Assembly: GCA_053919585.1 (NCBI GenBank)
Contig: CM132786.1
DNA: 64,000 bases
Reading direction: 5' to 3' (one strand)
DNA from: Euprymna scolopes
Lineage: Eukaryota
Shown one piece after another: positions 16,391 to 46,055 of the stretch. The notes under the pieces were generated by a model, which saw nothing but the letters and a program-made list of their open reading frames with translations, searched no databases and was not told the DNA's origin. A program made the position numbers and the translations under genes. Position 1 is the first letter of the stretch; every line of letters begins with the position of its first letter.

Positions 16391-16435
16391 CAACACACTG
16401 AAGATGGAGCATACCTCAGAAATATATTTGTGTTG
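16391..16435 (+). ncRNA. Minimal type I hammerhead ribozyme motif (best array copy)
   Basis: CAACACA-CTGAAGA-T-GGAG-CATAC-CTCA-GAAA-TATA-TT-TGTGTTG. Perfect 7-bp helix I, intact CUGANGA and GAAA, GAG/CTC helix II, palindromic loop 3. Predicted cleavage 3' of 16428. Confidence 0.8.
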
Positions 16436-28755: not shown

Positions 28756-30210
28756 GAATTCAGGTGATCGCTCATCCCCCTCTCAGTACAGGCAAATAAG
28801 TCTCCTGTGCGTCATGAGTAAGTTGCTGTAATCTGTGTTAAATACAGAAGTAATCAACAATCTCAACAAAAATAACCTTCTTAGTGACACTCAATATGGT
28901 TTCCGTTCTGCTAGATCTACAGCAGTTGTGCTTACAGTTATATCTCACAGGATTACCAAATCTCTCGACGGAGGCAACCTTTCTAGGGCAATTGCTCTTG
29001 ACATATCTAAGGCCTTTGATAGGGTATGGCATAAAGGTTCACTTCATAAGATCTCTAGCTATGGTATAGCTGGAAATGTCTTCTCAATTATTAAATCATT
29101 TCTTTCTGATAGGTTCATAAGAATAGTAGTTGAAACCCACAGTATTAATGCCGGTGTCCCTCAGGGATCCATCCTGGGCCAAACTCTTTTCCTGATCTAC
29201 ATTAATGATCTTCAAAATCACATCCTTAAATCATTTGTAGACATTTATGCTGACGACACTACCATTTATGGTAGCACATCTAAGACATTAAACGACCAAG
29301 TTCTCTCCAATTCTCTCTCCTCTGATCTTGAGCATGTAGTACAATGGGGAAAGGAGTGGCTGGTTACTTTTAATGCATCTAAAACCAAGCTTCTCTCTTT
29401 ACATAATCAACATTCTTATCCACATCTGGCATCAATTGAAATGAATGGCTCTCGTCTTCAGGAGGCCTCAAGTTTTGACAAGCTTCTGGGCTTGACCATT
29501 ACTCCTGATCTTAAATGGAACACGTCCATCAAATCTGTTGCCAAGGCCGCTGAAAAAATGGTGGGATCTTTCTATCGATCCAGTAGATATCTCACTGCTG
29601 ATGCAATTCTCTATCTATATAAGAGCCAGGTACGTCCAAGGATGGAATACTGTTGCCACATCTGGGCAGGAGCTGCTAGAAAGGACTGGGCCTGCCTTGA
29701 TAGAGTTCAAAATAGACTTCGCAGCCTCGTAGGAGATGCCCTTTTCTCTTCCTTGGAACCTCTATCTCACAGAAGAGATGTTGCGAGTTTGTCTCTGATG
29801 TATCGTTATTTTCATGGAAAGTGTTCGACTAAGCTTCAATCTATGGCCCCCCCTCGCCAAACTTTCACAAGAAACACTCGTCTAGCTGTAAACACTATCA
29901 ATAATGCCCCCCATTCTTTATCTGTGCATAAACCTAAGCGTAGATTCCATGAACAAAGCTTTTTTTATTAGAACTGCACGCCTGTGGAATTGTCTTCCGT
30001 TTTCCTGCTTTCCGGCTGACTACAATATGGTTGTCTTCAAGTCTTACGTAAATAAGTTCTTGATGAGCCGTTCCATATAAGTCATCAAATTTAACAAAGG
30101 TTCATTACTAATGATTATTATATTTTCTAATTTCTACTGTACACTCTTTAGCCCTCAACCTTGAGTGGCCTCTTGGCCTTGATAATGAGTTGATACCTAT
30201 GAAAAAAAAA
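28160..30210 (+). mobile_element. CR1-group LINE, best preserved 5'-truncated copy
   Basis: Two long ORFs separated by a frameshift, followed by a 3' UTR, the stem-loop and A9. Confidence 0.95.
28835..29971 (+). pseudogene. LINE reverse transcriptase domain (378-aa open stretch)
   Basis: QYGFRSARST, LDISKAFDRVWH, GVPQGSILG, YADDTT and RPRMEYCCHIW. Confidence 0.95.
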
Positions 30211-43285: not shown

Positions 43286-45004
43286 TTCAGCAAGTATACA
43301 ATAAAGTAAATTTTTGTCTGTATTCGACTCAATTTTGCTCTTGAAACGGTGTTGAACTCCACCAGATTTCAACCATTGAAACTGCTTTTGCTTAATATCA
43401 AGTATTTACATCCTTAGAGATGGTGTCGCCAATATTATTTACTGGAGACGTTTAACCAATAACTAGAGTAATTGTTACTATGNNNNNNNNNNNNNNNNNN
43501 NNNNNNNNNNNNNNNNNNNNNNNNNNNNNNNNNNNNNNNNNNNNNNNNNNNNNNNNNNNNNNNNNNNNNNNNNNNNNNNNNNNNNNNNNNNNNNNNNNNN
43601 NNNNNNNNNNNNNNNNNNNNNNNNNNNNNNNNNNNNNNNNNNNNNNNNNNNNNNNNNNGTTGTAGAAGAAATATTAATGATATTCATGTCTTGTTTAGCT
43701 GTTTTTTTTTTAAAGTTTTGTCTGTTCAGTGCAACAGTCTTCTGTAATATAATTATTCCTATTCCTAGTATCACTACATGTAGTAATGCTACTGCTAATT
43801 ATACTAAATCGTTCTCTAATTATTATCTGTGCTTCAAACATTTATAAAAGTTGTCCTCCGTTAATCCTTTATATGTTTTATTCTTTGGTTTGTTTTATTC
43901 CCTTCTACTTCACATTTCCGTCTCCTACTTCATTCATTTTCCATTTTTAACTTTCGTATTTATATTGCGATTCCAGCTATCTTTTCCGCACATCCCCTTA
44001 GAAATCATTCCCCTAATATGTCTGTTCGTGTTCAGTTTTTTTTGTTTTGTTTTTTGCTTTGTTTTGTAAAAGTGCTTTGTCTTTACTGCGCATAACAGCG
44101 AACAATCTAAAGTTTTGCTTTCTGTTTTCTAAAAGTTCATTCGTCTTCTAATTAATTTTCATTTCACTTGGCATAAAGAAGCAATTAGTCTTCCGTTTTC
44201 CATTTCAAGTATTTGGTCCTGATTTAACTTCCTCCCGTTTCTACGTTTGTGTTTTCTTGAGAGAATGTCTATACGTAGTTGTACCAAACGACATGGAAAT
44301 TTACAATTAGACAACAAAACATAGACCGTTTCAGCATCTCAAATTGAAAACTAAAATAAAATAACCAGAATTAATCAGTAAATTGGAATAGACAAGGAAC
44401 AAACAAATACGGTATTCCAAACAACGAGTTCATGGCTTCAGCTCTTTTAGAAATCGTTGATCAATATAACGAGTGTAGTAGAAAAATTGCTTAGATTATT
44501 TCTGTCTCATCTATTAATCAATGAAACAGTTCACATAGAACATAGACAAATTGTCAACAATAATATAATGCAAGTATTATAAAAAATAATACTTTCTGCA
44601 TGCATTCGTTTTAGTTGACGTAAAATCTATGATAATCGTAATGTGAACAATCTTGTCACATATATTTATAAAAAGCTAGACACGTGTATACATGCATAAT
44701 TGCGTATGCTAAAATAATCCCTAAAAAATACAGGGATCATGCAAGTCAGATTCTTTCTAAAATACTTATTAAATCAATATTATTTGGCGGAATTGAGAAT
44801 AGATAGGGGAGTTCTTGTATTATTCTCCAAAAGCCCATGATTTATTTCTATGCAGGTTAGTTAGTTCTGTTCCGTTCTGCAAACTAACTAAAACGAGTGA
44901 AAATTACTCTTAGTTTTATTTAGAGTAGCCTATTAAATAATATACCAATTATAGTATTTCGAAACAACTCATATTGGCATCATAAAATATGATTTTATAA
45001 TACA

Positions 45005-45339
45005 ACTGCCATCCGTAGTTGTTTTCGTCTCACGACATTTCTGACCAATTTACCTCGCCTTCGGTGGGATTGGCACGCCTTCGGTGGGATTGAAACCGCT
45101 ATCTTCAGACAATGTTCATCTGAATCGTAGATCAGATAATAAATACACGTGGATTTATAAGATCAAAGAATCCAACCTTGATCGCCCTTCGGGGCCCGTG
45201 GCGCAGTTGATAGAGACGTTGAATCTCTACGGTTCCAGATGAACATTGTCTGAAGATAGCGGTTTCAATCCCACCCAAAGCGTGCCAGAGGTTAATTGGT
45301 CAAAAATGTGGTGAGACGACAACAACTACGGATGGCAGT
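45005..45339. repeat. ~115-bp inverted repeat (arms 45005-45131 and 45226-45339)
   Basis: ACTGCCATCCGTAGTTGTT..GGGATTGAAACCGCTATCTTCAGACAATGTTCATCTG is the reverse complement of CAGATGAACATTGTCTGAAGATAGCGGTTTCAATCCC..AACAACTACGGATGGCAGT. The left arm has an internal duplication, CGCCTTCGGTGGGATTG x2. Confidence 0.95.
45184..45287 (+). ncRNA. tRNA-like Pol III head (SINE-like or pseudo-tRNA)
   Basis: A box TGGCGCAGTTGA at 45199-45210 and B box GGTTTCAATCC at 45261-45271. Anticodon-like stem-loop GAAT-CTCTACG-GTTC and variable-arm hairpin CAGATGA-ACA-TTGTCTG. Confidence 0.65.
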
Positions 45340-45370
45340 GATGGCTGAGAATGCAGTAAGGAGATTCGAA

Positions 45371-45434
45371 GTTCCTATCCGTCGCGGTTACCACCTGACG
45401 AAGGCCAGAGGAAGTTGGCCGAAACGGTGTGAAC
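45371..45434 (+). ncRNA. Type III hammerhead ribozyme
   Basis: CCGTC^ - GCGG-TTA-CCAC - CTGACGA-A - GGCCA-GAGGAAGT-TGGCC - GAAA-CGG. Helix III CCGT/ACGG is extended by GTTC/GAAC. GUC triplet, perfect 5-bp helix II, and one C-A mismatch in helix I. Predicted cleavage 3' of 45383. Confidence 0.85.
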
Positions 45435-45538
45435 CAATAAAAAGATCCAAAAACAACAACTAACAAAGATGAGACTAATAGTTAAAAATAAAAATTAACT
45501 TATAATGCTCATCTCAAAAAAATTAATTCCAATTAAGG

Positions 45539-45594
<56 letters not shown>

Positions 45595-45604
45595 GCTAGG
45601 TAAT

Positions 45605-45986
45605 ATACAAATATTTGTGCGTGAGGTCGCCAAGCTAATCAAACACCTTTATTCCATTAAAGCAACTGGTTTGACACTATTCCAATTATAGTGTTAAAAA
45701 GCTACAACAACAACTTGTCCCGATACTTACCAAACTGTTTAAGCGCTGCCTTAAGGAGAAGTGTTTTCCAACACCCTGGAAAACCTCATCAGTATTACCT
45801 GTATTTAAGAATTCATGTGATAAGTCATCTCCCTCTCATTATAGACCAATACGTCTCCTGTGTCTCATGAGTAAGTTAATAGAATCCATATTAAATACTG
45901 AAATAATCAACCACCTCTGCACAATAACTTAGCTTCCTAGTGGCACGCAATATGGTTTCGGTTCTGCTAGATCTACAGCAGATGTG

Positions 45987-45988
<2 letters not shown>
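45605..45988 (+). mobile_element. CR1-group LINE internal fragment between two (TA)n tracts
   Basis: Colinear with 28555-28930 (IPIIVLKKLQQQLVPILTKLFKRCLKEKCFP, QYGFGSARSTA). Confidence 0.88.

Positions 45989-46055
<67 letters not shown>

What the first reader, a model, noticed from the sequence alone, without database searches (positions are those of the whole stretch)
45184..45522. tRNA-headed element carrying a type III hammerhead ribozyme and an A-rich tail
Seen, in order: a C(UUCG)G hairpin (45184-45195), Pol III A and B boxes in a tRNA-like fold, and a ~90-nt body. Then a complete type III HHR (GUC at 45381-45383, CUGACGA, GGCCA/UGGCC, GAAA, helix III extended by GUUC/GAAC), AATAAA at 45436, a terminal hairpin AGATGAG..CTCATCT (45467-45514) and A7. 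Established: animal genomic HHRs are mostly type I, type III is typical of plant retrozymes and viroid-like RNAs, and schistosome SMalpha is a precedent for a tRNA-related repeat with a type I HHR. Inference: a ribozyme-bearing SINE-like element in which self-cleavage defines the 3' end of a ~200-nt Pol III RNA. I do not recognise this combination as a described family.
Basis: partly seen in the sequence, partly recalled or inferred. Interest (0 to 1): 0.85.

Follow-up and report, generated by a model that had tools for sequence, protein, structure and literature searches.

The report
Mollusc retroelement copy with Penelope-type hammerhead
This is one damaged copy of a very abundant non-coding jumping element of a mollusc genome.

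Summary

**What the locus is.** 45129-~45543 is one 5'-truncated copy of a very abundant non-coding repeat of a large mollusc genome (rough order 10^4-10^5 copies). An inverted partial copy of itself (45005-45131) precedes it, and it ends at a (TA)25 tract.

**The tRNA head.** A- and B-box-like motifs exist (45199-45209, 45261-45271). No tRNA fold is detectable. Other copies continue about 100 nt upstream of the boxes. The A7 run is internal.

**The type III hammerhead.**
- It scores 16.3 bits against Rfam's threshold of 48.5.
- So relaxed a motif arises by chance in about 5% of windows.
- It loses a helix III pair in the family majority, which has U rather than G at 45427.
- It is 9-10 kcal/mol less stable than a competing hairpin.

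**A better fit.** The same core matches the minimal type I hammerhead of Penelope-like elements:
- an unpaired A between A9 and G10.1;
- a G10.1-C11.1 pair;
- a palindromic C15.2-G16.2 with no loop 3;
- a GU(U/C) site, cut after 45428;
- helix I formed by 45386-94 and 45429-35.

Its chance rate is 0.002 per window. This copy has G at U16.1 and is probably dead.

**Novelty.** The kind is known (Sm-alpha, animal retrozymes). The scan has already reported sister families in this genome.

The parts
45005..45131 (-). Inverted, 5'-truncated partial copy of the same element (equivalent to 45226-45339). It holds a 20-nt tandem duplication at 45056-45072 / 45076-45092.
   Evidence: the repeat finder I8 and I11. 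blastn gives 83% over 128 nt, E 3e-34.
45129..45198 (+). 5' leader of the direct copy. It is truncated here: other copies carry about 30 or more further conserved letters upstream. It contains the GCCC-UUCG-GGGC hairpin at 45184-45195.
   Evidence: Many contigs of other copies align from 45129 and run on upstream with a shared consensus (loose ends). Depth rises gradually from 45129 to 45240.
45199..45209 (+). A-box-like motif (TGGCGCAGTTG; 1 mismatch to TRGCNNAGTGG).
   Evidence: It belongs to the only A+B pair in the window; chance gives 0.07 per window.
45261..45271 (+). B-box-like motif (GGTTTCAATCC; 2 mismatches to GGTTCGANTCC), 51 nt after the A box.
   Evidence: There is no tRNA model hit.
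45271..45325 (+). Unit-1 module, a degenerate paralogue of the hammerhead module. It keeps the CCACC / hairpin / AAAC-GU / GUGAGAC layout but has no CUGANGA and no GAAA.
   Evidence: Local alignment of unit 1 against unit 2 scores 37, against a shuffle mean of 22 (sd 4.3); 4 of 500 shuffles reach it. The family consensus of the two modules is near-identical over about 40 nt (loose ends at 45281/45291 and 45413).
45386..45435 (+). Penelope-type minimal type I hammerhead motif.
- Helix I 5' strand: 45386-94
- CUGACGA: 45395-401
- Unpaired A: 45402
- Helix II: 45403-07 / 45416-20
- GAAA: 45421-24
- C15.2-G16.2: 45425-26
- U16.1 position: 45427 (G in this copy, U in the family)
- H17: 45428
- Helix I 3' strand: 45429-35
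   Evidence: The family majority has T at 45427 (about 100% of depth in 4 runs). The type I descriptor is met with that letter and has a chance rate of 0.0023 per window. The minimum-free-energy fold of 45340-45440 has the same topology. The features match PMC4209133.
45376..45430 (+). This is judged a by-product, not the functional fold.
   Evidence: Rfam Hammerhead_3 scores 16.3 bits against 48.5. Chance rate is 0.0525 per window. Folding energy is -12.3 against a minimum of -20.9 kcal/mol, or -8.1 against -17.9 with the family-majority letter.
45436..45543 (+). A-rich tail specific to a minority subfamily (GC 0.20). It holds AATAAA, a 7-bp inverted repeat and an internal A7 run. There is no TTTT anywhere on the + strand of the element.
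   Evidence: Depth falls from about 1 million to about 9 thousand across it. Homology to another copy runs through 45525-45543.
45543..45593 (.). (TA)25 microsatellite abutting the 3' end of the element.
   Evidence: Junctions of other copies also carry TA or ATATATA (table 5c).

Best explanation
45005-45543 is an insertion of a very abundant, non-coding, non-autonomous retroelement family of a large mollusc genome. The family unit carries four things:
- a leader;
- Pol III-type A- and B-box-like motifs;
[quoted passage not shown] Shown here:
- the high copy number;
- the linkage of the box region and the hammerhead core in other copies;
- the inverted 5'-truncated partial copy at the 5' side;
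- the (TA)n at the 3' side;
- the fit of the family-majority sequence to the PLE minimal-hammerhead design.

Inferred mechanism. Family RNA may start from the internal boxes, or it may be read-through or multimer RNA. Two hammerhead motifs pair through the ACGU palindrome (A15.1-C-G-U16.1) and cut the RNA after GU(U/C), at the position equivalent to 45428/45429. A PLE reverse transcriptase / GIY-YIG nuclease then copies the RNA into TA-rich targets. This process leaves partial tandem and inverted copies.

This particular copy is 5'-truncated and has G instead of U at position 16.1 (45427). Its own hammerhead is therefore most likely inactive. The 'type III' hammerhead is the same core read with a neighbouring hairpin and an upstream GUC.
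For: **Repeat family.** Summed contig depth reaches about 2.7 million over 45238-45261, against 16.7 on the unique left flank in DNA run X1. The family is also present in RNA-labelled runs and in several organisms, including mollusc metagenomes.

**Linkage.** Contigs from other copies span 45209-45407, 45237-45411 and 45255-45413 (table 8).

**Minimal hammerhead.**
- T at 45427 accounts for about 100% of depth in all four runs. H17 is U or C in subfamilies and never G.
- With that letter the type I descriptor is met. Its chance rate is 0.0023 per window, against 0.0525 for type III.
- The type I helices fold at -14.0 kcal/mol, against -8.1 for type III with the majority letter.
- The minimum-free-energy fold of 45340-45440 pairs 45386-89 with 45432-35 and the CCAC region with the strand after GAAAC.
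- There are 15 common polymorphic sites in 45163-45369 and none in 45370-45447. The expected number is 5.7, P 0.0035. Variation inside the motif is an indel in loop 2 (table 4).

**PLE-style architecture.**
- The inverted 5'-truncated copy abuts the 5' end.
- 'Opposite strands' and 'goes back' joints occur at varying positions in other copies (table 5).
- (TA)n lies at the 3' end and in other junctions.
- These are the features described for PLE insertions (PMC8557442).
Against: - No autonomous PLE with a matching terminal repeat was found. The only reverse transcriptase in the window is a generic non-LTR type.
- The inverted arm copies an internal stretch (equivalent to 45226-45339), not the present 3' end. 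It needs either a short form of the element ending near 45325-45339 or a second, independent insertion. One contig supports the short form (table 5c).
- The left flank is only TA-rich, not a microsatellite, and no target-site duplication was found.
- The dimer helix III would be only 4 bp. A competing hairpin (45380-45400) that pairs CGUC with GACG is 4-7 kcal/mol more stable than the type I helices.
- My type I descriptor was written after seeing the sequence.
- All comparative evidence comes from one read-laying run on assembled contigs. Contigs drop rare variants and clip diverged copies.
- No cleavage or RNA-end data exist.
Confidence: 0.6

Rival explanations
1. This is a tRNA-headed, LINE-type SINE in which a monomeric type III hammerhead cuts at 45383/45384 and sets the 3' end of a roughly 200-nt Pol III RNA.
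For: The motif satisfies a relaxed type III descriptor. It is the best Rfam family for the 96-nt stretch (Hammerhead_3, 16.3 bits, E 0.26). A- and B-box-like motifs lie upstream. The + strand has no TTTT.
Against: - The score is far below the gathering score (48.5) and is invisible in wider searches.
- The chance rate is 0.05 per window.
- Helix I has a C.A mismatch and a 3-nt loop.
- The family majority has U at 45427, leaving helix III with 3 bp before a large internal loop.
- Folding energy is -8.1 to -12.3 kcal/mol, against minima of -17.9 to -20.9.
- No tRNA fold is found.
- The family extends upstream of the head and downstream of A7.
- Type III is not the usual animal topology (PMC7761336).
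Confidence: 0.05
2. There is no working ribozyme. This is an ordinary tRNA-box SINE-like repeat, mobilised by a LINE or unknown partner, in which the hammerhead-like core is a chance motif or a long-dead relic. The inverted arm is an unrelated neighbouring insertion of the same abundant family.
For: - The paralogous unit-1 module keeps the hairpin and flanks but has no CUGANGA or GAAA, yet it is equally abundant.
- A bare core (CUGANGA, a helix of 4 bp or more, and GAAA) arises 0.26 times per window by chance.
- A more stable competing hairpin exists.
- With about 10^5 copies, adjacent insertions are likely.
- A LINE-type reverse transcriptase lies in the window, and an unconfirmed RT-like fragment adjoins the locus.
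Against: - The full minimal-hammerhead design, including the unpaired base after A9, G10.1-C11.1, the CG palindrome, H17 = U/C and a 7-bp helix I, is rare by chance (0.0023 per window).
- The motif lies in the least polymorphic part of the family.
- Inverted and tandem joints recur at other loci.
- The A run is not the element's end, and no target-site duplication was found.
Confidence: 0.25
3. This is a foldback or MITE-like DNA transposon. 45005-45339 would be a hairpin element with about 115-nt terminal inverted repeats and a 94-nt loop, and the downstream part would be unrelated.
For: The arms 45005-45131 and 45226-45339 are 83-96% complementary.
Against: - In other copies the sequence from 45129 on is preceded by a different, conserved upstream sequence, not by the inverted arm.
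- Contigs of other copies run straight across 45339/45340 into the hammerhead unit.
- Inverted joints in the family lie at varying positions.
- No target-site duplication was found.
Confidence: 0.05

Closest known systems
Minimal type I hammerheads (min-HHR) of Penelope-like elements (Cervera & de la Pena 2014, PMC4209133)
   Same: - The conserved core.
- One unpaired nucleotide between A9 and G10.1.
- The G10.1-C11.1 pair.
- A long helix II (5-6 bp).
- A short helix I.
- No loop 3, with a palindromic 15.2-16.2, so the motif would have to act as a dimer.
- Massive genomic copy number.
- Motifs on opposite strands a few hundred bp apart.
   Different: No PLE open reading frame or terminal repeat is attached here. 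Helix I has a 2-nt bulge. The motif lies in a short non-coding element behind Pol III-type boxes. This copy has G at U16.1.
Schistosoma Sm-alpha / Sj-alpha SINE-like elements (Ferbeyre 1998, Laha 2000; as summarised in PMC6765202)
   Same: A short non-coding retroposon with a Pol III-type promoter followed by a type I hammerhead. It has a high copy number and partly tandem copies.
   Different: Sm-alpha has a canonical type I hammerhead with a real, if short, helix III and shown cleavage. Here the motif is the minimal PLE form, cleavage is untested, and the host is a mollusc. No sequence similarity was tested.
Metazoan non-LTR retrozymes (Cervera & de la Pena 2020, PMC7229834; Li et al. 2026, bioRxiv 10.64898/2026.07.22.740005)
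   Same: Non-coding units of 170-400 nt with low GC and type I hammerheads. They are proposed to depend on PLEs and have been described in a mollusc (mussel).
   Different: Retrozymes are defined by tandem arrays and circular RNAs. This locus is a single unit. Only a rare head-to-tail joint (period about 392) was seen in the family, and no circular RNA evidence was obtained.
Type III hammerheads of plant retrozymes and viroid-like RNAs (Rfam RF00008)
   Same: The same conserved core letters, and an extra A after A9 as in the CChMVd plus-strand hammerhead (own knowledge; De la Pena & Flores 2001, cited in PMC4209133).
   Different: The score is below a third of the family threshold. Helix I is mismatched with a 3-nt loop. 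Helix III is not kept in the family majority.
Ceph-SINEs of squids and cuttlefish (Akasaki 2010; Kojima 2018, PMC5786205)
   Same: Abundant tRNA-related SINEs of cephalopod molluscs with modular bodies.
   Different: The 23-nt RTE-like signature of the Ceph domain quoted in PMC5786205 is absent from the whole window at up to 3 mismatches.

Membership tests
Hammerhead ribozyme type III (Rfam RF00008) | Conserved core CUGANGA ... GAAA ... UH | tested here: met
   45395-401, 45421-24 and GUC 45381-83.
Hammerhead ribozyme type III (Rfam RF00008) | Covariance-model score at or above the curated gathering score | tested here: not met
   16.3 bits against 48.5, seen only when 96 nt are searched. No hit.
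Hammerhead ribozyme type III (Rfam RF00008) | Closed helices I and II and an open, stable helix III, kept across relatives | tested here: not met
   Helix I has a C.A mismatch and a 3-nt loop. The family-majority U at 45427 cuts helix III to 3 bp. Energy is 9-10 kcal/mol above the minimum-free-energy fold.
PLE-type minimal type I hammerhead (PMC4209133) | [quoted passage not shown] | tested here: met
   A45402; G45403-C45420 (criteria).
PLE-type minimal type I hammerhead (PMC4209133) | No loop 3; palindromic 15.2-16.2, followed by U16.1 and H17 | tested here: inconclusive
   Met in the family majority (GAAA-CG-U-U/C). Not met in this copy, which has G at 45427.
PLE-type minimal type I hammerhead (PMC4209133) | Helix I formed by the strand 5' of CUGANGA and the strand 3' of the cut site | tested here: met
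   45392-94 / 45429-31 plus 45386-89 / 45432-35, with a 2-nt bulge. No covariation data.
PLE-type minimal type I hammerhead (PMC4209133) | Location in the terminal repeat of a Penelope-like element | not testable with these tools
   No other part of this genome could be searched. No PLE open reading frame lies in the window.
PLE-type minimal type I hammerhead (PMC4209133) | Self-cleavage (as a dimer) | not testable with these tools
   This needs in vitro transcription or RNA-end mapping.
tRNA-derived SINE (LINE-dependent) | A tRNA-related head at the 5' terminus | tested here: not met
   No tRNA by ARAGORN or the Rfam model. Other copies extend upstream of 45129 with a shared sequence.
tRNA-derived SINE (LINE-dependent) | Internal A and B boxes at tRNA-like spacing | tested here: met
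   45199-209 and 45261-271, with a 51-nt gap. Chance gives 0.07 per window. Promoter activity is untested.
tRNA-derived SINE (LINE-dependent) | A LINE-like or poly(A) 3' end and flanking target-site duplication | tested here: not met
   A7 is internal. The element ends at (TA)25. No duplication was found between the flanks.
Metazoan non-LTR retrozyme | Head-to-tail arrays of 150-450-bp units, each with a type I hammerhead | tested here: inconclusive
   This locus is a single unit. One head-to-tail joint (45521 to 45153, period about 392) was seen in DNA and RNA-labelled runs at low depth.
Metazoan non-LTR retrozyme | Circular RNA monomers | not testable with these tools
   Only assembled contigs were available.
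PLE-mediated insertion | An inverted 5'-truncated copy at the 5' end, partial tandems, and a (TA)n target bias (PMC8557442) | tested here: met
   Recurrent inverted and tandem joints, and TA at junctions, are. (TA)25 is. Caveat: the arm copies an internal part, not the present 3' end.

The most novel reading that the evidence does not exclude
The family is a true 'Penelope-dependent SINE'. It would be a Pol III-driven (A/B box) short element whose hammerhead-bearing tail and insertion machinery are borrowed from a Penelope-like element rather than a LINE, amplified to about 10^5 copies in a cephalopod-like mollusc. The papers I read describe SINE-LINE pairs and PLE-derived retrozymes, but no tRNA-box SINE with a PLE tail outside Schistosoma Sm-alpha.
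Probability: 0.35. Interest if true: 0.55.

Novelty: new member of a known kind. Interest (0 to 1): 0.3.

Why it matters
The finding's headline claim was a plant- or viroid-style type III hammerhead inside an animal SINE. That claim would have been surprising, and it does not hold.

What remains is a further family of hammerhead-bearing, probably Penelope-dependent short retroelements, with Pol III-type boxes, at very high copy number in a mollusc. This adds to the evidence that such elements make up a sizeable part of some invertebrate genomes.

It also gives a natural test case. One element holds an intact minimal-hammerhead module and a degenerate paralogue of it. Comparing the two could show whether these minimal hammerheads are needed for propagation.

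It is also a caution for motif-based ribozyme calls. The same conserved core can be drawn in two topologies, and only family-level data tell them apart.

Tried and rejected
- **Other copies in the window.** blastn of 44950-45600 against the window found only the inverted arm.
- **Public collections.**
  - A 20-mer from the most conserved stretch gave 0 viral contigs and 1 metagenome contig. That contig is a CRISPR array sharing 22 nt by chance.
  - A gapped helix II pattern gave about 200 chance hits in GC-rich bacteria and phages. None holds the element.
- **Rfam.** The gathering and E<=10 searches on wide stretches found no hammerhead or tRNA.
- **Weak Rfam hits.** SNORD107, mir-297, mir-1277 and Pestivirus hits are low-complexity or chance matches.
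- **Ceph-SINE membership.** The published 23-mer signature is absent.
- **Literature search by sequence strings.** This found nothing relevant.
- **Target-site duplication.** None was found.
- **Partner element in the window.** Only a generic RVT_1 open reading frame is present, and no GIY-YIG was seen (Pfam/NCBIfam scans of the large ORFs).
- **The search of earlier findings by sequence.** Blank.
- **Papers not held.** Ferbeyre 1998 and Lunse 2016 could not be read.

Full report
**1. The observation**

- the GCCC-UUCG-GGGC hairpin (45184-45195);
- GUC (45381-83);
- CUGACGA (45395-401);
- GGCCA/UGGCC (45403-07 / 45416-20);
- GAAA (45421-24);
- AATAAA (45436-41);
- the 7-nt inverted repeat (45467-73 / 45508-14);
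- A7 (45516-22).

An A-box-like 11-mer lies at 45199-45209 and a B-box-like 11-mer at 45261-45271, 51 nt apart. They are the only such pair in the window. First-order Markov simulations of the window give 0.07 such pairs per window.

A tRNA-like fold is not supported. ARAGORN finds no tRNA in the window. The Rfam tRNA model gives nothing even when only 116 nt are searched at E<=10.

**2. The type III hammerhead**

- Rfam finds no hammerhead at gathering thresholds in the window, nor at E<=10 on 1.2 kb.
- Only when 96 nt are searched alone does Hammerhead_3 appear. It scores 16.3 bits against a gathering score of 48.5, with E 0.26 for that tiny search space.
- The drawing needs three concessions: a C.A mismatch and a 3-nt loop in helix I, an extra A (45402) between A9 and helix II, and a helix III of 4 bp followed by a large internal loop.
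- A descriptor that allows these liberties finds this site. It also hits 0.0525 times per simulated window. The bare core (CUGANGA, a helix of 4 bp or more, and GAAA) hits 0.255 times.
- The drawn structure evaluates at -12.3 kcal/mol, against a minimum-free-energy fold of -20.9. In that minimum fold CGUC (45380-83) pairs with GACG (45397-400), inside the core. Folding z-scores are unremarkable.

**3. What the locus is**

Contigs of four public runs were laid on 44950-45650.
- The unique left flank has depth about 17 in DNA run X1.
- Depth rises gradually from 45129 to about 2.7 million at 45238-45261. It stays at 1-2 million through 45405, then falls to about 9 thousand by 45502-45525.
- The stretch is also held by RNA-labelled runs and by runs of several organisms, including mollusc and invertebrate metagenomes.

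This is therefore one copy of a very abundant repeat. The copy number is roughly 10^4-10^5; the tool warns that depth is not a copy number.

Other copies do not begin at the 'tRNA head'. Many contigs align from 45129 and continue upstream with a shared roughly 30-nt consensus that this window lacks (table 7). One contig shows (TA)n followed by that upstream sequence (table 5c).

Other copies also do not end at A7. A head-to-tail contig continues with letters that match 45525-45543 at 17 of 19 positions. The element here ends at a (TA)25 tract (45543-45593).

Box region and hammerhead core are linked in other copies. Contigs span 45209-45407, 45237-45411 and 45255-45413 (table 8).

**4. The inverted arm**

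45005-45131 is the reverse complement of 45226-45339, at 83% over 128 nt with E 3e-34. It holds a 20-nt internal duplication and abuts the point (45129) where the direct copy is truncated.

In the family, 'opposite strands' joints and 'goes back' (tandem) joints occur at several different positions. Junction fillers are TA or ATATATA (tables 5 and 5c).

Craig et al. 2021 describe exactly this for Penelope-like elements: strong 5' truncation, partial tandems, an inverted 5'-truncated copy next to the 5' end, and a bias for (TA)n targets (PMC8557442).

There is a caveat. The arm copies an internal segment, not the present 3' end. So either a short form of the element ending near 45325-45339 was involved, or this is a second insertion. 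One contig shows such an end followed by (TA)n. No target-site duplication was found.

**5. An internal duplication**

The element holds two paralogous modules. The module at 45271-45325 aligns with 45385-45440. The window copies score 37, against a shuffle mean of 22 with sd 4.3. The family consensus fragments of the two modules are nearly identical over about 40 nt (loose ends at 45281/45291 and 45413).

The first module keeps the CCACC strand, the GGCC hairpin and the downstream GUGAGAC strand. It has CAAAGC(A/G) in place of CUGANGA and AAAA in place of GAAA. Only the second module has a hammerhead core.

**6. A better reading of the core**

At 45427 the window has G, but about 100% of contig depth in all four runs has T (table 3). 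Position 45428 is U, or C in a subfamily.

The family-majority sequence then reads as follows:
- helix I 5' strand, 45386-94;
- CUGACGA;
- an unpaired A;
- helix II of 5-6 bp;
- GAAA, then C-G, U and U/C;
- helix I 3' strand, 45429-35 (3 bp, a 2-nt bulge, then 4 bp).

This is the minimal type I hammerhead that Cervera and de la Pena defined for Penelope-like elements. [quoted passage not shown]

Supporting results:
- A descriptor for this design is met once 45427 carries the majority letter. It arises only 0.0023 times per simulated window, about 20 times rarer than the type III descriptor. The descriptor was written post hoc.
- The type I helices evaluate at -14.0 kcal/mol, against -8.1 for type III with the majority letter.
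- The minimum-free-energy fold of 45340-45440 already has the type I topology.
- Among sites where 10-90% of X1 depth differs, 15 lie in 45163-45369 and none in 45370-45447. The expected number is 5.7, P 0.0035. The one common change inside the motif is an indel in loop 2 (table 4). Contig clipping may inflate this contrast.
- The decayed tandem array elsewhere in this window (16391-16435) carries the same design, with an unpaired U after the core and an AU palindrome as helix III.

**7. Mechanism**

Shown: the copy number, the linkage, the architecture, and the fit of the motif to the PLE design.

Inferred: RNA of the family starts from the internal boxes or arises as read-through or multimer RNA. 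The + strand has no TTTT over 417 nt, although T runs occur about 10 times per kb in the window. Paired minimal hammerheads cut this RNA after the 45428-equivalent. A Penelope-like reverse transcriptase and nuclease then copies it into TA-rich DNA, leaving inverted and tandem partial copies.

This copy is 5'-truncated and has G at U16.1, so its own ribozyme is probably dead.

Points against:
- no partner element was found;
- the dimer helix III would be only 4 bp;
- a competing hairpin is 4-7 kcal/mol more stable than the type I helices;
- there are no cleavage data.

**8. Comparison with known systems**

- A Pol III promoter followed by a type I hammerhead in a SINE-like repeat is the Schistosoma Sm-alpha design (PMC6765202).
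- Hammerhead-bearing short non-autonomous elements of animals, including a mussel, are the non-LTR retrozymes (PMC7229834). These are now argued to derive from PLE terminal repeats (bioRxiv 10.64898/2026.07.22.740005).
- The Ceph-SINE signature is absent.
- Earlier notes of this scan report several sister families in the same genome, described as 5.9 Gb and probably cephalopod. These have tRNA-type boxes plus a hammerhead, sit in (TA)n, and some are inverted pairs. The notes are unverified AI notes.

**9. Verdict**

The family is ribozyme-bearing and SINE-like. It does not have a type III hammerhead, a tRNA fold, an A-tail end, or an undescribed design. It is a new member of a known kind, of modest interest.

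Noticed in passing
window 45690-45987: An open reading stretch in the frame of 45690, with one stop near 45930. To my eye, from memory, it resembles the palm-region motifs of non-LTR (LINE) reverse transcriptases. It lies between two (TA)n tracts (45543-45593 and 45988-46051). The 80-aa piece gives no Pfam hit.
   Followed up: partly
window 28835-29971 (+): A 378-aa ORF with a clear RVT_1 domain (E 8.4e-27). It is a generic non-LTR type. No GIY-YIG domain was seen nearby, so it is not evidently a Penelope-like partner.
   Followed up: partly
window 16391-16435: The hammerhead of the decayed roughly 311-bp array has one unpaired U after CUGAAGA and an AUAUAU palindrome as helix III. This is the same Penelope-type minimal design as the family-majority form of 45386-45435, although the two repeats share no detectable sequence similarity.
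   Followed up: partly
window 45056-45092: A perfect 17-nt direct repeat at 20-nt spacing (CGCCTTCGGTGGGATTG, twice) inside the inverted arm. It is a local tandem duplication absent from the direct copy. On this strand each copy can form a C(UUCG)G-type hairpin.
   Followed up: no
window 45271-45325: A degenerate paralogue of the hammerhead module. It has the same hairpin and flanking strands but lacks CUGANGA and GAAA. It appears as abundant in the family as the intact module, which raises the question of whether the ribozyme core is needed at all.
   Followed up: partly
L001 500-720: The only metagenome hit for the 20-mer probe is a CRISPR array whose repeat shares 22 nt with the B-box region by chance.
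   Followed up: yes
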